From IMG/VR virus record IMGVR_UViG_3300042544_001590, positions 1 through 64,000 of that record: 64,000 nucleotides of DNA; one strand, given 5' to 3'. Made by a program: the position numbers and the translations under genes. Below, in pieces: positions 15,368 to 59,814 of the stretch; position 1 is the first letter of the stretch, and every line of letters starts with the position of its first letter. The notes below the pieces were generated by a model. That model saw only the letters and a list, made by a program, of their open reading frames with translations. It was not told the origin of the DNA and made no database searches.

Positions 15368-16186
15368 ATGAAGAGTATAAAATATCCCGAAAAAGCTGGA
15401 ATTTATAAATTAACCTGTAAAACGAGTGGAAAATTCTATATAGGGAAATCAATAAATATAAGAGATAGAATAAAACGACACGAAAAATCAGCCAAAGACC
15501 TTAAAAATAAATGTCGTATAGTAAAAGCTATAAGAAAATATGGGTGGGACGATTTTGAAGTTGAAATATTGGAAATTTTTGAAGATTTTAATAGAGAATT
15601 TGATGATGCAAAATTATTTTTAATAGAATCTGATTATATAACCAAGCTCAATGCAACTGATGAAAAAGTTGGGTATAATATCTTAACTTGTAATTCTGGT
15701 AAAAACGGGATGAAACATACTGATGAAACAAAGGAAAAACTTAGAAAAGCTAATTTGGGAAAAAAACACAGCGAAGAAACTAAAAAAATGATGTCTGAGA
15801 AATTTTCCGGTGAAAACCATCCGATGTGGGGTAAACATTACACTAAAGAAGCTTTGGTCAAAAAGTCTGGTGAAAATTCATGTTGGTATGGAGTAAAGGG
15901 GGAATCCCACCCTACTTATGGGCGCAAACACACACCAGAAGCTATAAAAATATTAAAAGAAAAAAGACAATTACAAGACACAACACCTTTCAAGAGAAAA
16001 ATAAAACAAATCAATTTAGAAAATGGTGAATGTGTTAAAATATGGGATAGTATTAAAGAGGCTGCTATGTTTTTTGGTGTGAATCCGACTTCCATATCTG
16101 AAGTGTGTAGTAAGAGGAAAAAAGGAAATAGTGTGACAAAAAGATGTAAGGGGTATGGTTGGGAATATTGCGATGTTAAAAACTAG
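15368..16186 (+). CDS. Free-standing GIY-YIG homing endonuclease with NUMOD3 repeats and C-terminal NUMOD1-like HTH
   Basis: AGIYKL...FYIGKS..R...H, GYN, repeated KHT/SEETKxK and GENHPMWGK; AT-rich; TAAATA 6 nt before ATG. Confidence 0.92.
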   Translation: MKSIKYPEKAGIYKLTCKTSGKFYIGKSINIRDRIKRHEKSAKDLKNKCRIVKAIRKYGWDDFEVEILEIFEDFNREFDDAKLFLIESDYITKLNATDEKVGYNILTCNSGKNGMKHTDETKEKLRKANLGKKHSEETKKMMSEKFSGENHPMWGKHYTKEALVKKSGENSCWYGVKGESHPTYGRKHTPEAIKILKEKRQLQDTTPFKRKIKQINLENGECVKIWDSIKEAAMFFGVNPTSISEVCSKRKKGNSVTKRCKGYGWEYCDVKN

Positions 16187-16457: not shown

Positions 16458-16895
16458 ATGAAAATTGAAATCACCACGGAGGAGAAACAGAAAATTCTCA
16501 AATTCTCCACAGACATCAGACTAAAATTTGATGATGGGGAAGTTGAACCCATTCATAATTCAAAGGAATCCAAAGATTTTGTTCGTGAATTTCTAAAGAG
16601 TCGTGGAATCGGAAAACCGAGGGTTTATGAACAGGGAATCTATGCTTTTGGTGATGTTGGGATGCACACTGACAATCTCTCCCCAAAATCTGCAATGACC
16701 ATGTGTTTATTGATTTCCGGTAGTGGTAAATTGTTCGCTTGGGATGGTAAAAAGGTAAATGAATGTCGTGTCAACAAAGGAGATGGTGTTATTTTCGATT
16801 TCAATCTCCCCCACTCATTTGAAGCTGATAAAACATGCCAAGCATTTCTAGTGGACATTCCAAAAAAATATAAGAAAAATTTACTGAATGAGTGA
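16458..16895 (+). CDS. Cupin / 2OG-Fe(II) oxygenase-like protein
   Basis: MHTD ... GDGVIFDFNLPHS (HxD...H). Confidence 0.5.
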   Translation: MKIEITTEEKQKILKFSTDIRLKFDDGEVEPIHNSKESKDFVREFLKSRGIGKPRVYEQGIYAFGDVGMHTDNLSPKSAMTMCLLISGSGKLFAWDGKKVNECRVNKGDGVIFDFNLPHSFEADKTCQAFLVDIPKKYKKNLLNE

Positions 16896-17991
16896 TATGA
16901 AACTCCCCGACACTGAACAATTTAATTTTAAAGATGTCACCATTGCTGGGGATGACTGTTGGCTGATTACACCATCCAATATGGCTACCAAATGGACTGA
17001 CGACAATGCACGATTTCGTTCATGTATTGTTCGTAAGTCGGATAACTTTGTAGTGTCGCAAGGATTTTCCAAATTTACCAACTTTGGGGAGAAGCCTGAT
17101 TTTCAACCATGGGATAATTCATGGAAGATTGAAGCAATACACAAATTAGACGGAAGTCTTTTGATCGTTTCAAAGTATAAAGGGGAACTTATCATAAGAA
17201 CCCGTGGAACTGTTGATGCTCGTCAAATGGCTAATGGTCATGAGATTGATCTTCTTATAAAGAAATATCCATTCTTTTTCAATTTCTTCACCAATCATAC
17301 TCCCCCAACAATGACTCAATCTATATTGTTTGAGTGGACTACCCCCAAAAACATAATTGTGATCAGAGAACATGAAACTCCCACATTGACATTAGTTGGT
17401 GTTGCATCACATGATGTATATGAAACATATTACGCTGGTCAAGAATGGTTGGATGATTTCGCCAAAGTATATGGTCTTACCCGTCCTGAAAAGTATGAAT
17501 ACAATTCCATTGAGGAGTGCATCCTTGATGTATCTGCTTGGAAAGGAAAGGAAGGAGTGGTTTTATACTCTCCCAATGGTCAAACATTAAAGAAAATCAA
17601 AGCAAGCCTCTATTGCGAACTTCATAAAATCGCAACGGGAATGCGAACCATTTCCAATGTGCTTGATGTGTTCATGGAGTCTCCCCGATTTGTGGAATAC
17701 CAAGATTTTTATAATTTCCTCTGTAACTCACTTGATTTTGAAATCGCGGAACGTGTCAAAGATGATATCGCCAAAATCACGGAAGCATACGGCAAATTCA
17801 TCCATTCCGTCAACACCATTGAACGTGCCATGGGATACATCTCCAAGCTGGACTCCCGTAAGAAGCAAGCAATGGCTATTCAGGAGCATTGGGACGGCTG
17901 GATGGTTCCGGTTAGCTTTTCATTGCTTGACAACAAGCCAATCGATGATAAGCTGGTGAAGAAATCAATGGAGAAGCTACTGAATCTATGA
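16888..17991 (+). CDS. RNA ligase 1 (T4 Rnl1-like)
   Basis: KFTNFGE, KLDGSLLI (motif I), FEW, KEGVVL (IV), KIK (V). Confidence 0.8.
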   Translation: MSDMKLPDTEQFNFKDVTIAGDDCWLITPSNMATKWTDDNARFRSCIVRKSDNFVVSQGFSKFTNFGEKPDFQPWDNSWKIEAIHKLDGSLLIVSKYKGELIIRTRGTVDARQMANGHEIDLLIKKYPFFFNFFTNHTPPTMTQSILFEWTTPKNIIVIREHETPTLTLVGVASHDVYETYYAGQEWLDDFAKVYGLTRPEKYEYNSIEECILDVSAWKGKEGVVLYSPNGQTLKKIKASLYCELHKIATGMRTISNVLDVFMESPRFVEYQDFYNFLCNSLDFEIAERVKDDIAKITEAYGKFIHSVNTIERAMGYISKLDSRKKQAMAIQEHWDGWMVPVSFSLLDNKPIDDKLVKKSMEKLLNL

Positions 17992-18513: not shown

Positions 18514-18760
18514 AACAACAACCATCCTCAATAGAAGCTCAATGGGAAGTTGAACTGAATTGCAAATGCCCCGAATGTGGGGAATTTGTCAATCTTCTAG
18601 AAGCTCCCGATTTTTGGGATGGACGAGGATGGTTGGACATCCCACAGCATAATACGGAAGCAACCAATAATCTGGAAGTTGATTGTCCTGAATGTGAGCA
18701 CTTTTTTGAAGTGTGTTGTGTGTGGTAATCTTTAAAAACTAGAATACAATAATTTCCAAT

Positions 18761-18949
18761 GATCGCTTCGGCAGCATCACAACATTGCCAGAACCTCCCT
18801 CTACCATTCACTTGGCAAGGAGACTGGCGGGATCGAGAAATGGAGCCTTCGGGTGTGCGGAAAAAGTCAGTAATGACAGGCATAAATTCCATATATCCCC
18901 AAACTCGGATGCTGAAAAGGTGGGCGCACACCGTTCCGAAGCGATCACC
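18761..18949 (+). ncRNA. Unknown ~190-nt pseudoknotted RNA with terminal stem and 3' ACC
   Basis: TGATCGCTTCGG (18760) pairs with CCGAAGCGATCA (18936); CAGCATC/GATGCTG; GGTGTGCG/CGCACACC crossing it; TTGCCA/TGGCAA; GTCA-GTAA-TGAC; follows module at 18733. Confidence 0.7.
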
Positions 18950-19093
18950 TTTTTAATATGGACAAGAAAGTAAAAATTCATAAATTTTGGATACCTGCAA
19001 CATCTACTGTTGGGGTATCAAGAGATAGGCTTTTCGTTGCAAAGGCTGATTATGATAGAGTGATAAAGCGTATTAAAGAACTTGAAGAAAAAC

Positions 19094-19741
19094 ATGATTA
19101 AAATTAAGAAAAAACGCAAGGATTACGATAAAATCCTATTCATTTCAGACACGCACTTTGGACATGACAAGCCGTTCCTATGGGAGCCAAGGGGATTCCA
19201 ATCTGCCAAAGATCATGATGAATGGATTCAGGATCAGATTGATTCCATTTCTCCTGAGAGTCTGCTTATTCACGTTGGCGATGTGGGCTTGTCAGTTGGG
19301 GCAGAGCGCATCAAAGACTTTATGCTAACATTCCCCTGTGAAACTCTGATGGTGAGGGGCAACCACGATTCAGGAGTTCAACAACTCTATCAAGAGCATC
19401 TACCGGAAGGTTTTCAGAATTGTGAATTGTATCCAATTCGTATTACGCCAAACATTACGTTGTTGGGTTATGAATTCCTATTGGATATTGATCGTGATCA
19501 ATTCTATGTGAGGCACATGGCAGCGTTGGTTTACCCCTTCTGTAATAAAAATTATTCACATATCTGCGGTCACTCCCATGGCAATCTAAAGCAAGCCAAT
19601 CCTGATGGGAATGGTTTTGGTAAGATGCTTGATGTGGGGGTGGAGAATGCCAAGAGGTATAATGGAACCGCTTTCTTCAAGCTGGAGGAAATTGTGGATA
19701 TCATGGCTAGGAAAGAAACATCGAAATTTGATCATCACTGA
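19094..19741 (+). CDS. Metallophosphoesterase
   Basis: SDTHFGH, HVGD, RGNHD, CGHSHG, LDVGVE. Confidence 0.88.
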   Translation: MIKIKKKRKDYDKILFISDTHFGHDKPFLWEPRGFQSAKDHDEWIQDQIDSISPESLLIHVGDVGLSVGAERIKDFMLTFPCETLMVRGNHDSGVQQLYQEHLPEGFQNCELYPIRITPNITLLGYEFLLDIDRDQFYVRHMAALVYPFCNKNYSHICGHSHGNLKQANPDGNGFGKMLDVGVENAKRYNGTAFFKLEEIVDIMARKETSKFDHH

Positions 19742-20254: not shown

Positions 20255-20634
20255 TTTAAAAAATAGACTATAATAAGATCATGAATGGATACTTGGGAGA
20301 ATTTGAAGTGGATATGGAAGACACGCCATACAAGGATTATGATAAATCCGATTGGATGGTGGAATATATCCAAATGTATGGAGGTATTGATGGTAGCCAT
20401 CACAAGGATTGGGTGATGGATCAATGCATCCGTATTTGGAGTGGTTCAGAAGTGATTGTTAAGGAAGCTCGCTGGAAAGATGGAGAGCGAGAGTATTCGG
20501 AATTTAGAATCAATGTCGGAGAACCCACCAAAAAATATGAAAAATTGGTGGAGGATACCGAAGAAGAAGGATATGAATGGAATCAAGGAATAGCACCTTA
20601 AAAACTAGAATACGATTATGCCAACAGGATAAAA

Positions 20635-21969
20635 TTATCCAAAATCTGAGTAACCACTAACAAGTGATTTCTCAGATTTCAGACTAAAACAACTCCATCG
20701 ACTAAAATCATAGTCCTTGAAGAGAAACCTTAATTCGTTCAGTTTCTTATTATCTCTCAGATATTCATGAATGCCTTTGTAACCAATATTCTTAGGGTTA
20801 TAGTCCGATAGAATTGAATTCCATCTCTCTTTTATCAGACCCCTATTAATCTTTGGATATAAGACATCCACATCTGAAAATTCTTTACGCTTTTTGATAT
20901 AGCGATTTAAAAACACATGGCAACGGCGAGCAATTTCTAATGCTGCCGCAATGCTGTCGGTTTCCTCTGGATGATCAAGACATCCAACGGTGGAAGAATA
21001 CGCACATATAATCTCTTGGTTTTTGATACCAAGAATGTTAAGACGCTTAATGAGGTTTTGTGAAAATTTTAAACGATTCCAAGAGTTATTAAGGAGTCTA
21101 TTTAGCTTACGTCCTTTATTGTGGTCTTTAGAAGACATTGTAAGCTTCTCAAGACCCACACATTCCACTTTATAATATTTACAGAGATTTGATATGGATT
21201 TGGCAATTTCTACAACCTCGTGATCCTTTTTATTCTTACTATACGTCTCATTCAGCTTGGTAAGATCATAAACACTCTTATGGATGATAGTATCATCATT
21301 GAAATCCCTGATTGTAAATGCGATGTAATTGGGATTTAAATCCAATCCTGTGATTCTATTTTCAATAAATTGGTGTTCTTGTTCCATTAAGACAGATTCA
21401 TCAAAAGTAATATAAATATAATTATTATCTAATTTATAAGTGATCGGGGTGGAATTAAATTCAAAATACGATTGTAACTTTTCAAGCATCTTCCATCTGG
21501 AATTTGAAGTATTTAATTTCAAATTATAATGATCATTTTTAGTGCGTTTGAATATAATTTGTTTATTTATAATATCTAATTTTAATTTTCTATTACCGAG
21601 GGGTTCGTTCCGACCACCATTAAAAAAAGCTGGTCGGCTGTTTTTAATATTATTAAATTCTTCTTTAGTAATTATGCCTTTATTAAAACGTTTCCACTGA
21701 TTAAGTGATCCAAATGTTGTTTTGGTTTGTTTACACTCTTTAGCGGATTTAAAGAGAGCGGAAGCATCTCCAATTTGTGCTGCAAGGATGCTGGCATCAA
21801 CCAAATCATAATTAACATTGTAAGAACTCTTGATTTTTCTGGTGGCGTGGGTGATATCGTGTTTTTCCTTTTTGAAAATATTGAAAGCAATTCTTTTGAT
21901 CTTGTTGCATTCCTTGAGGAATGGTGCAAGATCGGAATCACATTCATATTTGACTTTGAGAGTAGTCAC
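20635..21969 (-). CDS. tnpB: TnpB/Cas12f-like RNA-guided RuvC nuclease, no TnpA
   Basis: RuvC I GLDLNPNYIA, II VGLEKL, III ETDSIAAALEIARR; AYSS motif; no zinc finger; probable GTG start 5 nt after TAAATA. Confidence 0.75.
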   Translation of the reverse strand: MTTLKVKYECDSDLAPFLKECNKIKRIAFNIFKKEKHDITHATRKIKSSYNVNYDLVDASILAAQIGDASALFKSAKECKQTKTTFGSLNQWKRFNKGIITKEEFNNIKNSRPAFFNGGRNEPLGNRKLKLDIINKQIIFKRTKNDHYNLKLNTSNSRWKMLEKLQSYFEFNSTPITYKLDNNYIYITFDESVLMEQEHQFIENRITGLDLNPNYIAFTIRDFNDDTIIHKSVYDLTKLNETYSKNKKDHEVVEIAKSISNLCKYYKVECVGLEKLTMSSKDHNKGRKLNRLLNNSWNRLKFSQNLIKRLNILGIKNQEIICAYSSTVGCLDHPEETDSIAAALEIARRCHVFLNRYIKKRKEFSDVDVLYPKINRGLIKERWNSILSDYNPKNIGYKGIHEYLRDNKKLNELRFLFKDYDFSRWSCFSLKSEKSLVSGYSDFG

Positions 21970-22010
21970 ATAAGTATTTAGTATATAACACGTTATTTTT
22001 TGAAATAGTG

Positions 22011-22038
22011 TTGACATCTTTAAAAACTAGATTACAAT
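22011..22038 (+). promoter_or_regulatory. Module copy with canonical -35: TTGACA-N16-TACAAT
   Basis: Same arrangement at 46175 (TTGACT-N16-TACACT). Confidence 0.75.
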
Positions 22039-35640: not shown

Positions 35641-38300
35641 AAACTAGAATACACTGATCCCATGCCCGACATTGAAATTAACGGAACAAAATTGTGCGTA
35701 TCTTTGGAAACCATCATCAATGGAATGTCCAAGGAACAGAAGAGAGAAGTCCTATCATGGCTTGCCACCGATGGGGAAGTCATGGAATCCGTGGTGGATC
35801 ATATTCTGGGAAGGGATGAGCAAGGATGGTCAACGGGTGATCCAAACCGTTGCCAACAAATCCTTGGGGAAGTGGAGGATTTCCATCTTGCTGATGTCAG
35901 ATATAACTGGAAACCTTGGGATGAAATCAAGCAGAAATTGAAGAACATTCGTGCTGATGAGCGTCTGTATTGGGTTCTCTATCATCAAATTGACGCACAA
36001 ACGAGTAGTATGGTGTTCAATGAATTACGGAGACTTGGGGTGGAATCCAATTACACAACCAAAGAGGCTGATGAGGATATTGCCACGATCCATGAGATTA
36101 TCAAGGATACGTTCAAACAGATGGCTAAAGATAAGGTTAAAAACTAGAATACAATAGCAACATGTTTAAGCTACCACAAATAATCATTGGCTGTATCCTA
36201 TTCTTTATCGGCATGTCCATCCCTCTGGGATTCTTCAGCCTGTTTGGTATGTTATTGGCACTTGTTGGCACGTTCTTTATCTCCCGTCCTTTCGCATTGG
36301 ATAGCGGATTTGGGAATACTCCCATGTTCTTCCTGTTGGGCATGTTCGTGTTTATCCCCTCGTTCTTTTTAACACGAAAGACTTTCATTGAATTTGGTAT
36401 GGATGACTTAACAATCGGGGCAATCCGTCTCACACTTTGTATGGTGGGGGGTGTGCTTGCCTTTCTCTCAATCTCAAAATCAAAATAATATGCAAGAATT
36501 CATAGCTTATAGCAACATGGTAATCGGATCACTTTCAATCACTGGAGCATTAATATTGCAAACCAAAAATTGGCAAAGTTCATTCGTATTCAAGGTTATT
36601 CCAATGTTTAGTGGTTTGATACTTGTGATTAATGGACTGTATCTTATCGGTTTACGGTTTTAAAAACTAGACAATAATCACAACATGACACTGGAAGAAT
36701 TCCAACAAACCAAACAGAAAGAACTTGCAAATCTCATTCCATGTCGTAAGATCGCTTACGAAGAGGGAACGGATCACAAGGTTGTTCTAAGCAATGACAA
36801 GTTCTGGGACTTATTCGCATTCTTCAAGAATCAATGGCACTACATTACAACAATTAAGATATAACATGACAAAGTATCAAAAATTATGGTTTGAAGAAGG
36901 TTATTATGATAACCAACAAGGGGAACATCCCGAAGCATTTTGTCAGGAAAAGTGGATGAAGTCCATATATGACTGTGGTTGGGGTGGTGAACAATTTACA
37001 ATGATTGTGGAACACTTTCCATTCTACAAACAAGGAGCAACAAAAGCATATAACGAAAAAAACAAATAACATGGCTAATAAAAAAACAAGGGCAAGTCGG
37101 GCAAGAGGATGGTGCAGCACACTGGATGAGCAAACCAATGGCAACAAAATCTTCAAGGGAGAGATTTGTGATACTGCATGGAACGCGAAAGCATCCAACA
37201 AGCGAGCGCGAAAGGTCTATGGTAGGATATCACAACAAGGCAAGGACTGATGGGTAGCATGTTTGACAACCGCAAGATTCTCCATGGCCTTCCAAAGGAT
37301 GGTCAGAAGATCGAAGCCATTACTAACAAAACCAATTCGTGGTTTCTATCAGTGGTGGAAGATACTAAAAAGCTGAAGATTGGAAAGGAATATACTGTTC
37401 TCAAGACGGAACTCAATTCATCCAGTTCTTATGTGTGGCTTGAGGAATTTGGAAAAGATGTATTCTTTAATATACATAGCTTTGAATGGGAACTCCCGAA
37501 TCTTGATCCAAATGATCTGATTGGGTTTTTCGTTTCCGATATGAATACCATTCATCACAAATATGGGTGGGGTGTTCAAGTGGGGGAGAATATCAGACAT
37601 GAGGGAAATCCCATGATCGTGGTGAAGTGTGAGAATAAGGAACATGTCGATTACATCACAAGCGTAGAATTTAAAAACTAGAATACAATAAAGACATGAA
37701 ATACACAGTAATTTGGGAAGACCGCTGGCAATCAGGATCACATCATCATTGTATCACAAAGAAGACTTGGGTGGAAGCTAATTCCATTGAAGACCTTATG
37801 AAAGAATATGGTGATTATGCCCGATTCATTTTTGAGGGACATATCCTAACTTTGGGGGAAGAATTCAATCAGGAATTGGTTGATGTGATTGTTTAAAAAC
37901 TAGAATACAATATCAATATGAATAACGAACAACAAATAAACGAAGCCCTTCAATGGCTACAATCGACGGGTCAATCTTTGGTTGACTTCACTGGCGAACA
38001 ATCTCCTCTCTACTGTCAGGAAGTTCTCAATTGGACATTCTATGGTAATATGATAACGGTAATCATCGGCATCATTTGGATTATTGGTTCTCTGTTTCTA
38101 ATCAAACCGTGTATTAAAGCTTGGAATTTTGAATATGGTTATTGCAACAAAGGAGCAGCAATTTCTGTATCTACCTCTTTGGCGTTGGTGATTGCAGGTG
38201 CATTCATACCAATTACTATTCTCAGTGTTGTTGATATGGTTAAAATTAAGGTTGCACCACGAATGGTATTGGTTGAGCATTTTCAACAAAAATTAAAGTA

Positions 38301-38762: not shown

Positions 38763-38774
38763 CAATTTTCCAAT

Positions 38775-38973
38775 GGAGCAACGGTGTGGAAAATCTTAGA
38801 CACACAGCAGAGTCGCTTGAAGTATCTCTGGATTAGTTTATCAGGCAAGAAAGAAGGAAAGACGAAACCTTCCCCCTGACGCACGAGTAGCCAGTCGTGG
38901 TGAAAGCCAGATATGTTGAGTAGATCGTGGGCATGATCAGCCTAGAGTGGGGGTAAGACCCACTTGCTCCACC
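38775..38973 (+). ncRNA. Unknown ~200-nt RNA with tRNA-like acceptor, D-like and T-like arms
   Basis: GGAGCAA/TTGCTCC+ACC; GTGT/ACAC; GTGGG-7nt-CCCAC; internal TCAGG/CCTGA, GAAGG/CCTTC, CACGA/TCGTG; no convincing ORF. Confidence 0.7.
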
Positions 38974-39060
38974 TTTTTAATAAATAAAACACTAACCACC
39001 GCGAAAATGCGTGGCCTGACGGCAAATGGAAGCTCTACCAAGTGGGGGACTGGCATTCTG

Positions 39061-39183
39061 CATAACGCCGATGTGATGGCATCGCTGCCGAGAGCGAGCG
39101 TCGATCCTCCAACCAAACACTGATATGCCAAACGACTCCGACAACACAGCGGGCAGCGATTGTCCATCCACGCCTTGTTCGCT
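39061..39183 (-). mobile_element. Integron attC-like site 1
   Basis: AAC-GCCGATGT-GATGG-CATCGCTGCC ... GGCAGCGAT-TGT-CCATC-CACGCCTT-GTTCGCT: imperfect palindrome with unpaired spacer and extra bases on one arm. Confidence 0.7.
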
Positions 39184-39427
39184 TTTTCGAGCCACTTGGG
39201 AGGAGAGAGATGGTAAAATGGAACCTGTGAATACTCCTGATCTCTTCGTGTGGGCCTGCGTGAACACAAAAACCGGAGAGGTGGAGATGACGGAAATCCA
39301 GCCCTTCGACGACGATCTCAATGAGAACCTTGTGGAAGGGTGGGAGTGGAGACGCTTCCGACTCATTGAAGCGAACGTCCAAGGCCATGCGACGGCGCGC
39401 AGTGGCCCGAATCCACCACCGACTTGA
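39125..39427 (+). CDS. Cassette-borne hypothetical protein
   Basis: GC-rich; starts inside attC1 loop and ends inside attC2 loop. Confidence 0.6.
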   Translation: MPNDSDNTAGSDCPSTPCSLFRATWEERDGKMEPVNTPDLFVWACVNTKTGEVEMTEIQPFDDDLNENLVEGWEWRRFRLIEANVQGHATARSGPNPPPT

Positions 39428-39464
39428 ACGGCTAGTTCCCGTTGCCATGACTCCCTTGTTAGCC
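39370..39464 (-). mobile_element. Integron attC-like site 2
   Basis: AGCGAAC-GTCCAAGG-CCATGCGACGG ... CCGTTGCCATG-ACTCCCTT-GTTAGCC. Confidence 0.65.
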
Positions 39465-39475
39465 TTCTTAATTTT

Positions 39476-39691
39476 ATGACCTACATACCAGACCCAATCG
39501 AAAGAGGCGAGATGCGTGCCGAGGCCGCATACGATGAAATGATCCAACCTGACGGCAGGATGAAATGCCCGTGCGGAGAACTGTTCGACCCCGACAGCGA
39601 GGGCGGAACACTCAGCCCCGATCCGTATGCAATGCCCGTCTGCGGGAAATGCTGCGAGGAGTATTTTTCTCAGGCTAACAGTAACTTATGA
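39476..39691 (+). CDS. Cassette-borne small zinc-binding hypothetical protein
   Basis: CPCG...CGKC; GC-rich; bounded by GTTAGCCT (39458) and AGGCTAAC (39672). Confidence 0.65.
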   Translation: MTYIPDPIERGEMRAEAAYDEMIQPDGRMKCPCGELFDPDSEGGTLSPDPYAMPVCGKCCEEYFSQANSNL

Positions 39692-39778
39692 CCCCCAATA
39701 AGTGTCCATAACCATGCCGGAATCAATTACACGCTTTCCTTACTACATTCTTAAAAACTAGAATACAATACAAAAACA

Positions 39779-41423: not shown

Positions 41424-44400
41424 ATGAAACCAACAATCAGTCTGATTAAGTCCATCATTTGGAAAATGTATTATCACCTATCTTTAGGCAAGGATTACCA
41501 ATCCAGTATGAAGAGTGCATCCAACATCTTCTCCAACGTGATCGACTCCACGAACGGTAGGGTGTCGCATTTCCATAACATCAAAGGTGATCGCATTCGG
41601 GGATGGCATAAGCGAATCAAGTTCAATGTCAATGTCACACAACATCCTTTAATCTCAAAATATTATTAATATGATGACTGATATTTACAAAATCGGAGAA
41701 TACACCATCTTAATTGAACGTGATGAAGATGATGATAATTTCTGGTATTATCATAATGTAATTCTACCAAACGGAGAACAACATATGTTAGATACTTGCA
41801 GAAATATCAATAATAAGGATATTGCGGCGTTTATATCATTCTATGAAGTCCATGGTAGATTTCCAACACGTAAGGATCATCCGACGAATAAGGTTGTAGG
41901 GTTGAATGCCAAGCGGATTTCGGAGATTAAATAACACCATGAGCCAATGTCGCTACTGTCAGTCCCAATCGTATGGTCTAGGTTGTCCCGCTTCCCCATG
42001 GGGGAGACATGAGCATTTCAACAATGAAAAGAAATGTGAATTTTGCGGCGGGACTGGATACGGTTCGGGATGCACACTTAGTCCTGTTAAAAAGCATAGG
42101 CATGGAAGCGGCAAGAACAAGTGTAGGTGGTGTGGAAATACTGCGATGGGTATGGGCTGTATCCATTCCCCAAGCGGATTCCATGAGAAGTGATGTTTAA
42201 AAACTAGATGATACTTAGGATATGACAAAAGCAGATTCTTTCAAGGAAAAATTACAAAATCTTTTGGATGATTTCAACGCATCCATCATATTCAATTTCA
42301 ATCCACCAGATATGAAGATGTTGGAATATTGTAATGGTTTTCAAGTCTGTTTTGAACTGGAGGTAGATAAGTTTCAATTCGTCCAATTGACTGGTGGGGA
42401 TAACTTTTCAATTGAAAAAGATACTATCCTTAAAAACTAGGCGATACTTGGTGTATGAAAATTATCCCGACTGATTACAAAATCGAACACGATTTGAACG
42501 AACACACTTATTATATTGTTCGTAGAATGAGCCTTAAATATAATAATAAATGGTTTGTTACCATGTATGACCGAAATGCTTTTTTAGTGGAGAGCGACAT
42601 GGGTTGGTCTTCTTGGACTTGTGATGAACATGGTTATAATACCCCCGAAGAAGCTTTGGAAGCTTGGGAAAGATACATAAAAACTAAGGGATACTAACCA
42701 CGACATGAAAACATTCACAATTGAACAAGTCCTCGAATATGTCGAAGGGTGGTTGGGTGCTGATGACGACAAGCAAACCCTAAACATGAACCAGATCAAG
42801 GCAATGCTGAACAATGCTCTGGTATGTGTGGACGATCCAAGCGATGGGATCGAAGAGTATGTGGAGCGTAAGGGTATTCCACTGTATAAGGTATTAGGAT
42901 TACCAAAAGATTCATTTAAAGATTTCATCGAAAACAACAAGGATTTGGTATAAAACAATTTAATAATATGAAAGATGTGGACTTTGATAATGATTTCAAG
43001 CTGGGTAAAGCCAAGCATAAAAATCTTGGGAATGTTGAAATAACTGAAGCATGTTTATTCATGCAAGATTGTAATCCCGATCCTTCGACTCTTTATGTTG
43101 AACATGATGGTGATATTAAAGAAGTATCTTACAATATGATGATTCCCGAATCTAAAAAATAAATATGAGAACTGAATACACAAACAGTTGGGGAAAACGC
43201 ATCATAATGACTGATTGTGTGGAGTATTGGGAAGACCCTTTCATCTGTGATGATGTTGGGGAGCCGAAGGGTCAATGTGGAAGCTGTGGTCATAAGTGGT
43301 ATGAACATGAATTGGATGCTCTGCCATTGATTGCCAGAACATCCGCATTGGAAATCCAAGATCGGGAATTTTCAATTTTAAGAAATAAATAATATGATTA
43401 ACGCAAACGAAGCACGGGAACTATCAGGCAAGACGATTCAGGAATTGGCCGAGGATTTTGATGAGCCTATCCGCAAAGCTGCCAAGGATGGCAAGCGGAG
43501 CATTTGTCATTACCACGGAACGCTGGAAAACGAAGCGTATTCCAGAACTGAAAAGTGGGATAAATTCGTGGCACACATGGATGATCTTGGGTTTACCGTT
43601 TCCCTTCATTACGAAGAGAGACAATTTGTGGATATGCGTATCAATGTCAAATGGGAGTGACTTTTAAAAACTAACACACAATAGCTTTGTTCTCTCAGGG
43701 GGTGATCTCCCCTTTCTCCGAGATTCCGTAGCATGGCAGTATAAATGGAGACGGAGAGGACTTTACTTTAAATATTATCATGGGCAGACCACAACAAATT
43801 GAAAAGGAACTTGATTGGGAATTTGCCACACATTGGGGTGAAAAACCTTGGGGAATCAAGAAGAAATCCCATAAGTGGGAGAAGGATCAACAACATCGTC
43901 GGGAGCGTAGGAGAGCGAATGACGATCCTGAATGTGGTGCGGAGTATCGCAAGTATGATGGGTTTATTTGGTGATAAAAACTAGAGGATACTTGAGCCAT
44001 GAACGACGACACTTACGCGCTTCGCATGATTGCGATAGCCAATGCTGAGATTGCGCGGGTCAACCTTCGCGTTGAATCCATGAAAGCTGAAAATACTCAA
44101 CGTATGGGAGATGGATTATCCCTAGCTTATACTGAAAAGGCTTTCATTGATGAGGAAGCGGGACTCAATTACGCAATTTCCCTATTACAATTTTAATATT
44201 ATGGAAGATTTCATAGATAAATTTGAAGAGTGGACAGACGAAGAACTCACCCAAAGGTGGAACTATCTGGAAACCAAACCGCTATCCCATTATGTGTCCC
44301 AAACGATGGATGACATTGAGGCAAGTCTTAGCTATCGGAGGGTGGTAGCTTGGGATGCGGATGGTAAGATCACCCACAGGGATTAAAAACTAGATTACAC

Positions 44401-59642: not shown

Positions 59643-59717
59643 GCGCTTGTAGCTCAGTGGTTAGAGCGAGCCTCTCATAAAGGCTGGGTCGATGGTTCAA
59701 TCCCATCCGAGCGCACC
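59643..59717 (+). tRNA. tRNA with CAU anticodon (elongator Met or Ile2)
   Basis: GCGCTTG/CGAGCGC, AGCCT-CTCATAA-AGGCT, ends ACC. Confidence 0.88.
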
Positions 59718-59737: not shown

Positions 59738-59814
59738 GGATGCGTAGCTCAACTGGATAGAGCAATTCCCTTCTAAGGAATAGGTTGTGGGTTCAAATCC
59801 CGCCGCGTCCACCA
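59738..59814 (+). tRNA. tRNA-Arg(UCU)
   Basis: GGATGCG/CGCGTCC-A-CCA, ATTCC-CTTCTAA-GGAAT. Confidence 0.92.

What the first reader, a model, noticed from the sequence alone, without database searches (positions are those of the whole stretch)
18751..18958. Unrecognised ~190-nt pseudoknotted RNA with acceptor-like 3' ACC
Seen: 11-12-bp terminal helix, 7-bp inner helix crossed by an 8-bp pseudoknot (GGTGTGCG/CGCACACC), nested hairpins including a GTAA tetraloop, and its own module promoter. Flanks AATTTCCAAT|G... and ...ACCTTTTTAATA are essentially the same as those of the unrelated RNA at 38775. Inference: matured like a tRNA (RNase P, CCA completion); a possible decoy, ribozyme or reduced tmRNA-like RNA. 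No family I can recognise.
Basis: partly seen in the sequence, partly recalled or inferred. Interest (0 to 1): 0.72.

Follow-up and report, generated by a model that had tools for sequence, protein, structure and literature searches.

The report
New structured RNA gene, lake phage
A roughly 190-base non-coding RNA gene with a conserved fold sits among the early genes of an uncultured T4-like lake phage. It matches no catalogued RNA family, the claimed pseudoknot is not supported, and its function is unknown.

Summary
The RNA is real. Window 18761-18949 (+) folds into a multi-branched structure that is kept in seven sequence variants from lake phage contigs: 94% of cells paired, 13 pairs with compensatory changes, 0 of 500 shuffles as good, and 31-41% paired in the slid controls. 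The overlapping 65-aa ORF carries stop codons in three of the four relatives checked. G-U pairs put the RNA on the + strand.

It is not kept in the relatives, it clashes with two hairpins that covariation supports, and an 8-bp match arises in 15% of shuffles.

No Rfam family, tRNA or tmRNA model matches. A covariance model of the RNA finds one copy per phage and does not match RNA B or the T4 RNAs C and D.

The gene moves between genome neighbourhoods and has five unrelated downstream genes, so it is an autonomous RNA gene and not a leader.

The flanks it shares with RNA B (AAT|G and ACC|TTTTT) look like those of this phage's own tRNA genes, and the phage encodes a CCA-adding enzyme. tRNA-style end maturation is therefore plausible here. 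A second subgroup of the family lacks the ACC, so the ACC is not essential. No transcript data could be found.

The parts
18733..18750 (+). Promoter module TAAAAACTAG-AA-TACAAT upstream of the RNA
   Evidence: 117 copies of TAAAAACTA in the genome, 115 of them on the + strand. In 74 of the 115 an ATG lies exactly 15 nt after the motif; here an ATG lies at offset 17. The module is present in the L066, L004 and L312 variants and absent in L013, L255 and L328.
18751..18760 (+). 5' flank AATTTCCAAT, shared with RNA B (38765-38774)
   Evidence: It is kept in subgroup I even where the promoter module is missing (L013). It is absent in subgroup II (L255, L328).
18761..18949 (+). RNA A: the structured non-coding RNA, from the first base of P1 to the ACC
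   Evidence: Covariance model R1 scores it at 224.5 bits, and it is the only copy in the genome. Seven variants are known.
18761..18771 (+). P1, 5' strand; pairs with 18936-18946
   Evidence: 11 bp with 4 covarying pairs. Two internal mismatches appear in the L066/L004/L312 variants.
18936..18946 (+). P1, 3' strand
   Evidence: helix 1.
18772..18778 (+). P2, 5' strand; pairs with 18908-18914
   Evidence: 7 bp, 100% of cells paired, 2 covarying pairs (helix 2).
18908..18914 (+). P2, 3' strand
18785..18830 (+). P3 domain: a long hairpin with two internal loops. It is the nearly invariant core of the RNA.
   Evidence: 40 of 46 columns are invariant, against 22 of 68 in the P5 region. The tip hairpin has one covarying pair (CCA/TGG to CTA/TAG). 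Variant L328 has one C-U mismatch in P3a.
18834..18837 (+). P4, 5' strand; pairs with 18904-18907
   Evidence: 4 bp, 1 covarying pair (helix 6).
18840..18844 (+). P5, 5' strand; pairs with 18888-18892
   Evidence: 3 covarying pairs in the RNAalifold alignment. This helix is misaligned in A5 and A7.
18845..18854 (+). UUCG-tetraloop hairpin
   Evidence: G-U changes to C-G in three variants (helix 8).
18866..18877 (+). GNRA (GTAA) tetraloop hairpin
   Evidence: 3 covarying pairs (helix 9).
18919..18932 (+). 3' hairpin whose loop always carries a G+C-rich palindrome
   Evidence: The stem GGTG/CACC changes to GTTG/CAAC in L013. The loop holds GCGC in the window variant, GCGC/CGCG in L013, and CGTACG in L255 and L328.
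18947..18957 (+). 3' tail ACC-TTTTT-AAT, shared with RNA B (38971-38981). The next ORF starts at 18958.
   Evidence: ACC is kept in subgroup I and absent in subgroup II, where a run of T follows P1 directly.
18852..18859 (+). Not supported.
38775..38973 (+). RNA B: an unrelated RNA with the same flanks. It has a 7-bp terminal helix, an adjacent 5-bp hairpin, and then ACC.
   Evidence: It is not matched by model R1. Copies at 98% identity occur in related phages.

Best explanation
RNA A is an autonomous gene for a stable, structured, trans-acting small RNA of about 190 nt. It belongs to a small clade of uncultured T4-like lake myoviruses and is expressed with the early genes.

Shown:
- It has a conserved multi-branched fold. 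P1 and P2 are stacked. They enclose a nearly invariant P3 hairpin domain and a variable P4/P5 domain capped by UUCG and GNRA loops. A 3' hairpin sits at the P1/P2 junction.
- It is non-coding and lies on the + strand.
- There is one copy per phage.
- It occupies different genome neighbourhoods and has unrelated neighbouring genes in different phages.

Inferred:
- In this phage it is built like the phage's tRNA gene modules: AAT|G at the 5' end, an 11-12-bp terminal helix (as long as a tRNA acceptor/T-arm stack), then A-CC and a run of T.
- Its ends are therefore probably made by the tRNA machinery. That would be RNase P at the 5' end, then 3' trimming and completion of CCA by the host enzyme or the phage's own CCA-adding enzyme.
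- The invariant P3 domain is the likely contact site for a protein or RNA partner.
- The palindromic loop of the 3' hairpin may let two copies pair.

The biological role is not known. The closest analogues are the tRNA-cluster RNAs C and D of T4, whose roles are also unknown.
For: Structure: 94.2% of 364 cells paired, 13 pairs with compensatory changes, 0 of 500 shuffles as good, and 31-41% paired in the slid controls.

Strand: invariant or derived G-U pairs in P2, P3, P5 and the UUCG hairpin fit the + strand only.

Non-coding: the 65-aa ORF has stop codons in L013, L066 and L004.

Autonomy:
- In subgroup I the RNA lies between the RNA ligase and phosphoesterase genes.
- In subgroup II (L255, L328) it follows a small basic protein whose homologue in this genome is at 37071-37238.
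- Five different genes follow it, and the three small downstream ORFs compared show no similarity to one another.
- It has its own promoter module in four of the seven variants.

tRNA-like module:
- Phage tRNA genes have AAT|G at the 5' end and ACC(A)|TTT at the 3' end. tRNA-Met 59643-59717 ends GCGCACC|TTT.
- The phage encodes a PolyA_pol + HD nucleotidyltransferase at 76607-78133.
- RNase P is known to process non-tRNA phage RNAs (PMC11143913).

Core: the P3 domain has 40 of 46 invariant columns.
Against: - No transcript evidence exists: no RNA run was listed.
- Subgroup II lacks both CCAATG and ACC, so tRNA-like ends are not universal.
- The next ORF starts 8-20 nt after the tail and has no promoter of its own, so the RNA is co-transcribed with downstream genes. 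It could therefore also act in cis or as a processing signal.
- The family holds only seven closely related variants (76-100% identity), so some of the covariation is inherited rather than independent.
- No T-loop or other tRNA elbow motif was found.
- No partner has been identified.
Confidence: 0.6

Rival explanations
1. It is a cis-acting 5' leader, either a riboswitch or a protein-binding attenuator, that controls the ORF immediately downstream (18958-19101) and the phosphoesterase operon.
For: The promoter at 18733 has no ORF of its own, unlike most of the 115 + strand modules. An ATG follows the RNA within 8-20 nt in every variant, and there is no promoter in between. The size, the closing P1 helix and the invariant internal loops all resemble an aptamer.
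Against: The downstream gene differs in five ways: a 47-aa ORF, a 68-aa ORF, a 54-aa ORF, a 66-aa ORF, or the phosphoesterase directly. The three small ORFs compared show no similarity. The RNA sits in two different genome neighbourhoods. No expression platform or alternative pairing with the start region was seen. No riboswitch model in Rfam matches.
Confidence: 0.12
2. It is a processing or termination signal only. P1 plus the run of U would mark where transcripts are cut or ended, like tRNA punctuation, releasing a downstream mRNA with a very short leader.
For: A run of T follows P1 in all variants. In subgroup II it abuts the helix, and a run of A lies upstream. The phage's genes lack Shine-Dalgarno motifs (16 of 166 against a 16% background) and mostly start at a fixed short distance from the promoter. 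Fresh 5' ends close to the ATG would therefore suit translation.
Against: A 190-nt fold with a nearly invariant 46-nt domain and eight internal helices is far more than punctuation needs. The ACC spacer and the weak base of P1 make a poor intrinsic terminator. The terminator scan reports nothing here.
Confidence: 0.08
3. It is a tRNA mimic that works through a CCA end. It could be an aminoacylatable RNA, a reduced tmRNA-like RNA, or a decoy for tRNA-targeting defence nucleases, linked to the neighbouring RNA-repair genes.
For: In this phage there is an ACC after a 11-12-bp helix, next to a T4 Rnl1-type RNA ligase (16888-17991) and a metallophosphoesterase (19082-19741). The phage encodes a CCA-adding enzyme.
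Against: ARAGORN finds no tRNA or tmRNA here, and Rfam finds none. There is no T-arm, no anticodon-like conserved loop (the loop sequences vary) and no tag frame. Subgroup II lacks the ACC and is not next to the ligase or phosphoesterase genes.
Confidence: 0.07
4. It is a ribozyme of a new class, self-cleaving or otherwise catalytic.
For: It has a complex conserved fold with invariant unpaired nucleotides and matches no known family.
Against: No known ribozyme model matches. RNA B has the same flanks but a different interior, so the ends are more likely set by a shared trans-acting factor than by self-cleavage. There is no positive evidence.
Confidence: 0.04
5. It is a protein-coding gene: the 65-aa ORF at 18759-18956, starting at the ATG placed like other promoter-proximal start codons.
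For: The ORF spans the region exactly. Its ATG lies 17 nt after TAAAAACTA, close to the usual 15 or 18 nt.
Against: The frame has stop codons at codon 3 in L066 and L004 and at codon 20 in L013. Indels of 1-2 nt separate the variants. Substitutions follow base pairing rather than codon positions.
Confidence: 0.01

Closest known systems
Bacteriophage T4 small stable RNAs C and D (species 1 and 2 RNA, in the tRNA cluster)
   Same: Both are non-coding RNAs of 119-139 nt (T4) or about 190 nt (here), encoded by T4-type myoviruses on the same strand as the tRNA genes. RNA D ends in CACC followed by A. Their role is unknown (PMC3014915). Like RNA A, they are absent from Rfam.
   Different: There is no sequence or structure homology: model R1 scores below 8 bits on the T4 region. 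RNA C carries a canonical T-arm and RNA A has none. RNA A lies outside the tRNA clusters and has its own promoter module.
Non-tRNA RNase P substrates of phages and bacteria (P1/P7 C4 antisense RNA, phage M3 RNA, 4.5S RNA precursor, tmRNA precursor)
   Same: A terminal helix with a G at +1, a U at -1 and a 3' A-CC, the features RNase P uses on tRNA-like substrates. This feature list rests on my own knowledge of RNase P. The list of substrates is from PMC11143913.
   Different: None of their Rfam models matches. Cleavage has not been tested. Two family members lack the ACC.
Candidate structured RNAs predicted in IMG/VR phage genomes (PMC10690425)
   Same: It is a covariation-supported intergenic RNA motif of uncultured phages, with unknown function.
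   Different: Whether RNA A is among those 10,006 candidates could not be checked, because no supplementary files are held.
Kissing-loop dimerisation hairpins (HIV-1 DIS; phi29 pRNA loop-loop contacts)
   Same: A hairpin loop carries a G+C-rich palindrome flanked by purines, and the palindrome survives sequence change (GCGC, CGCG, CGTACG). The resemblance is recalled from memory.
   Different: No dimer has been shown. The phi29 pRNA model in Rfam does not match, and this phage is a T4-like myovirus with no known need for a packaging RNA.

Membership tests
tRNA | Cloverleaf with D, anticodon and T arms, detectable by ARAGORN or Rfam RF00005 | tested here: not met
   ARAGORN and Rfam find 5 tRNAs in the window and none at 18761-18949. 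Covariation supports P2 rather than a D-arm pairing.
tmRNA (one-piece or two-piece) | tRNA-like domain with a T-arm, pseudoknots, and a tag reading frame ending in a stop codon | tested here: not met
   ARAGORN and the Rfam tmRNA models do not match, even at E up to 10. There is no T-loop next to the 3' strand of P1. No reading frame is conserved.
T4 RNA C / RNA D | Sequence and structure homology to T4 rnaC or rnaD | tested here: not met
   Model R1, run with filters off on the T4 tRNA region, gives a best score of 7.9 bits, and that hit is not on rnaC or rnaD.
RNase P / CCA-enzyme substrates with tRNA-like ends | G at +1 with U at -1, a terminal helix of 7-12 bp, and a discriminator base plus CC(A) at the 3' end | tested here: inconclusive
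   All features are present in subgroup I (window, L013, L066, L004, L312) and in RNA B. The ACC and the G at +1 are absent in subgroup II (L255, L328).
RNase P / CCA-enzyme substrates with tRNA-like ends | Actual cleavage at 18760/18761 and a non-templated A after ACC | not testable with these tools
   No RNA sequencing run holding the stretch was listed.
Riboswitch or cis-regulatory leader | Consistent association with one class of downstream gene | tested here: not met
   Five different downstream genes and two genome neighbourhoods.
Any Rfam 15 family (including GOLLD, ROOL, HEARO, Y RNA-like, 6S, RNase P RNA, pRNA, known ribozymes and riboswitches) | Covariance-model score at or near the family's gathering threshold | tested here: not met
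   There is no hit at gathering thresholds. At E up to 10 there are only four chance-level hits. Just one of them overlaps the RNA on its + strand: AgvB, 17 bits against a threshold of 56.
   67% of cells paired and 337 of 500 shuffles as good. No other covarying crossing helix was found.
Kissing-loop dimer RNAs | A self-complementary loop sequence kept through sequence change | tested here: inconclusive
   The loop holds GCGC, GCGC/CGCG or CGTACG in the three loop versions. By my rough estimate the chance of this is of the order of 0.002, but there are only three versions, and dimer formation cannot be tested here.

The most novel reading that the evidence does not exclude
RNA A and the unrelated RNA B, which has the same flanks, may represent a class of phage small RNAs carried in the same gene module as the phage's tRNAs. 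On this reading they are matured by RNase P and the phage's own CCA-adding enzyme. RNA A would act as a symmetric homodimer, formed through the palindromic loop of its 3' hairpin, and would present two copies of the invariant P3 domain to a host or phage partner. That would make these lake phages a comparative handle on the still unexplained T4 RNAs C and D.
Probability: 0.15. Interest if true: 0.65.

Novelty: new variant of a known kind. Interest (0 to 1): 0.45.

Why it matters
T4-type phages have been known for about fifty years to make small stable RNAs beside their tRNAs, and no function has been assigned to them. Here a distant T4-like lake phage carries two further unrelated structured RNAs, each wrapped in the same flanks as its tRNA genes, and it also encodes its own CCA-adding enzyme. 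RNA A has a well-defined, covariation-supported fold and a nearly invariant 46-nt domain, so it is a tractable object for structure probing and partner pull-down. The interest is limited because the family is narrow (seven close variants, all from lake metagenomes), the host is unknown, and thousands of phage RNA motifs of unknown function have already been predicted.

Tried and rejected
- Rfam at gathering and at permissive thresholds found nothing.
- ARAGORN found nothing at the RNA.
- BLASTN of the 2-kb region against cultured phage genomes gave no match.
- Exact 14-mers from the core, searched in IMG/VR, gave mostly chance hits. L014 was a chance 20-mer inside a coding region.
- Structure-based patterns were searched in IMG/VR, JGI metagenomes and GTDB genomes. 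They gave seven real variants and no bacterial or prophage copy. All partial hits failed the covariance model.
- More distant phages of the clade, reached through phosphoesterase homologues, lack the RNA at that locus. One has a tRNA-Ser there instead.
- Ro/TROVE protein, tested for a Y-RNA reading, is absent.
- RNA runs: none was listed. Read laying was not used, because DNA runs cannot show transcript ends.
- Complex prediction with the CCA-adding enzyme was not folded and gives no evidence.
- Supplementary data of PMC10690425 are not held.
- An RNase P RNA reading was rejected: the GGAAAAAGTC stretch that recalls conserved region I is not kept in L004 or L255.
- An intron-containing tRNA was rejected: there is no T-arm, and P2 covaries.
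- A TnpB guide RNA was rejected: the RNA is on the opposite strand, 1.7 kb away.
- An anti-Shine-Dalgarno mimic (CCTCC/GGAG in P3a) was rejected: the phage's genes lack Shine-Dalgarno motifs, and L328 has CCCCC/GGTG.
- The tail CACCTTTTT is complementary to the internal GAAAAGGTG, but this pairing is not kept in L013 or subgroup II and is absent in RNA B. It is left unexplained.

Full report
SETTING
The window is the first 64 kb of a 207,489-bp IMG/VR phage record with direct terminal repeats and 39% G+C. The phage has a tail sheath, a portal protein and a family-B DNA polymerase. That polymerase is under 30% identical to those of cultured T4-like cyano-, pelagi- and enterobacterial phages. 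The phage is therefore a distant, uncultured T4-type myovirus. The DNA occurs in lake-water metagenomes.

The first 67 kb form an early-type region of small + strand genes. Most of them sit behind a repeated module, TAAAAACTAG-NN-TAcAAT. There are 117 copies, and in 74 of the 115 + strand copies an ATG lies exactly 15 nt after the motif. Genes lack Shine-Dalgarno motifs. The genome carries 13 tRNA genes. It also encodes a PolyA_pol + HD nucleotidyltransferase, which is the architecture of a CCA-adding enzyme, at 76607-78133.

THE OBSERVATION
The promoter module is at 18733-18750. The flanks are truly shared with a second RNA at 38775-38973. The 12-mer CACCTTTTTAAT occurs only at these two places in 207 kb, and both are preceded by (T)TTCCAATG. 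The stretch folds better than shuffles (z = -4.0).

HOMOLOGUES AND STRUCTURE
I collected seven distinct variants, 76-100% identical, all from lake or freshwater phage contigs. They came from exact and structure-based pattern scans of IMG/VR and JGI metagenomes, and from contigs encoding homologues of the neighbouring phosphoesterase. The variants are the window sequence, L013, L066, L004, L312, L255 and L328. There is no copy in GTDB genomes or in cultured phages.

RNAalifold and explicit pair counts agree on a nested fold of 52 pairs in ten helices. On the seven sequences, 94.2% of cells pair and 13 pairs show compensatory changes. None of 500 column shuffles does as well, and sliding the partners by 1-3 columns drops pairing to 31-41%.

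Covariation supports these helices:
- P1: 4 pairs.
- P2: 2 pairs.
- The tip of P3: 1 pair.
- P4: 1 pair.
- P5: 3 pairs in the RNAalifold alignment.
- The UUCG hairpin: 1 pair.
- The GNRA hairpin: 3 pairs.
- The 3' hairpin: 1 pair.

G-U pairs in P2, P3, P5 and the UUCG hairpin fix the strand as +. The P3 domain (18785-18830) is nearly invariant, with 40 of 46 columns unchanged, against 22 of 68 in the P5 region.

THE PSEUDOKNOT
The 8-bp complement 18852-18859 with 18925-18932 exists only in this variant. Across the variants 67% of its cells pair, no better than shuffled columns (337 of 500 as good). Its two strands belong to the conserved UUCG hairpin and the conserved 3' hairpin. A perfect 8-bp stem turns up in 15% of dinucleotide shuffles of the RNA. 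A scan of all column pairs found no other crossing helix with covariation. I treat it as chance.

NOT CODING
The ORF at 18759-18956 (65 aa) starts where promoter-proximal start codons lie. In L066 and L004 it stops at codon 3, and in L013 at codon 20. Variants also differ by 1-2-nt indels.

NOT A KNOWN FAMILY
Rfam 15 gives no hit at gathering scores and only chance-level hits at E up to 10. ARAGORN finds no tRNA or tmRNA here. Model R1, built from the family, finds one copy in the genome. It scores under 8 bits on RNA B and on the T4 tRNA region that holds RNAs C and D. Rfam also fails to recognise T4 RNAs C and D, so a negative Rfam result does not by itself mean that a phage RNA is undescribed. 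The phage has no Ro/TROVE protein.

AUTONOMOUS GENE, NOT A LEADER
In subgroup I (window, L013, L066, L004, L312) the RNA lies between a T4 Rnl1-type RNA ligase gene and a metallophosphoesterase gene. The genes directly next to it differ between variants. In subgroup II (L255, L328) it follows a small basic protein whose homologue in this genome is at 37071-37238, about 18 kb away and close to RNA B.

Five different genes follow the RNA: ORFs of 47, 68, 54 and 66 aa, or the phosphoesterase directly. Pairwise BLASTP among three of the small ORFs finds nothing. More distant relatives of the clade lack the RNA at the ligase-phosphoesterase locus, and one has a tRNA-Ser there instead. This pattern fits a self-contained RNA gene that moves within the mosaic early region. 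It does not fit a regulator of one downstream gene, and it weakens any functional link to the RNA-repair genes.

THE FLANKS
In this phage the tRNA genes are preceded by AAT|G in four or five cases and followed by ACC(A)|TTT. tRNA-Met 59643-59717 ends GCGCACC|TTTAAAAAC, so its CCA is incomplete, exactly as in RNAs A and B. The T-run plus A-run after these genes is the start of the next promoter module.

RNA A has an 11-bp P1, or 12 bp counting U18760-A18947. RNA B has a 7-bp terminal helix followed directly by a 5-bp hairpin. Both give the 12-bp length of a tRNA acceptor/T-arm stack, which is the unit read by RNase P and CCA-adding enzymes (established knowledge, not tested here). RNase P is known to process several non-tRNA phage RNAs (PMC11143913).

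tRNA-style maturation of A and B in this phage is therefore a reasonable inference. It is not a property of the family. L255 and L328 have AAAAAGCTT before a 10-bp P1 and a run of T directly after it, with no ACC. In L013 and RNA B the 5' flank is kept without the promoter module. That argues the flank is read as RNA or as a minimal -10 element, and I could not decide which.

A POSSIBLE DIMER CONTACT
The loop of the 3' hairpin holds GCGC in four variants, GCGC/CGCG in L013, and CGTACG flanked by purines in L255 and L328. A G+C-rich palindrome survives three different loop sequences, which is what a kissing-loop homodimer would need. By my rough estimate the chance of this is of the order of 0.002. 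That rests on only three loop versions and nothing else, so it is a lead and not a finding.

WHAT COULD NOT BE DONE
No RNA sequencing run containing the stretch was listed, so expression, RNA ends and CCA addition remain untested. The complex prediction with the CCA-adding enzyme was not folded.

VERDICT
This is a real, structured, non-coding RNA gene of a narrow phage clade, unrecognised by Rfam. The nearest analogues are the unexplained small stable RNAs of T4 (PMC3014915). The tRNA-like maturation is plausible for this phage but not essential to the RNA. The tmRNA idea is rejected. The decoy and ribozyme ideas have no supporting evidence.

Noticed in passing
window 38775-38973 (+): RNA B is a second RNA of about 199 nt with the same flanks as RNA A but no similarity to it. 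It has a 7-bp terminal helix (GGAGCAA/TTGCTCC), directly preceded on the 3' side by a 5-bp hairpin with a 7-nt loop, then ACC and TTTTT. There is no Rfam hit. Copies at 98% identity occur in related phages.
   Followed up: partly
window 38900-39700: A 52-56% G+C island lies just after RNA B in a 39% G+C genome. It contains only short ORFs without Pfam hits and no Rfam hit. It could be foreign DNA or a further RNA.
   Followed up: partly
window 20635-22017 (-): A 460-aa ORF lies on the minus strand in an otherwise all-plus region, with RuvC-like motifs by eye. Pfam gives no hit, but the gene at the matching place in relative L310 (5458-6501, -) carries PF07282 Cas12f1-like_TNB. It is probably a TnpB-like insertion. 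A + strand promoter module at 20599 points antisense into it.
   Followed up: partly
whole genome; window 7577-63880: The promoter module TAAAAACTAG-NN-TAcAAT occurs 117 times. An ATG lies exactly 15 nt after the motif in 74 cases, and the genes have no Shine-Dalgarno motifs. This suggests leaderless or near-leaderless early mRNAs.
   Followed up: partly
window 43665, 46185, 49635, 59153, 62639, 63880; genome 65580: These promoter modules are not followed by an ATG at the usual distance. They may drive further RNA genes or long leaders. For example, a G+C-rich hairpin follows the module at 43665.
   Followed up: no
window 59643-59717 and 59738-59814: tRNA-Met and tRNA-Arg start directly after the TAGAAT of a promoter module. 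Either transcription starts right at the end of the module, or these tRNAs are read from upstream promoters. This bears on where RNA A's transcript begins.
   Followed up: no
window 15368-16186; genome 88887-90572 and 200817-202643: Homing endonuclease genes: one GIY-YIG + NUMOD3 and two HNH.
   Followed up: no
window 18914-18922 and 18946-18954: GAAAAGGTG inside RNA A is complementary to the tail CACCTTTTT (9 pairs, one of them G-U). The pairing would compete with P1 and with the 3' hairpin. It is not kept in L013 or subgroup II and is absent in RNA B. It remains unexplained.
   Followed up: partly
L307 3205-3313: In a more distant relative (phosphoesterase 65% identical), a tRNA-Ser (UGA) gene lies in the ligase-phosphoesterase interval in place of RNA A.
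   Followed up: no
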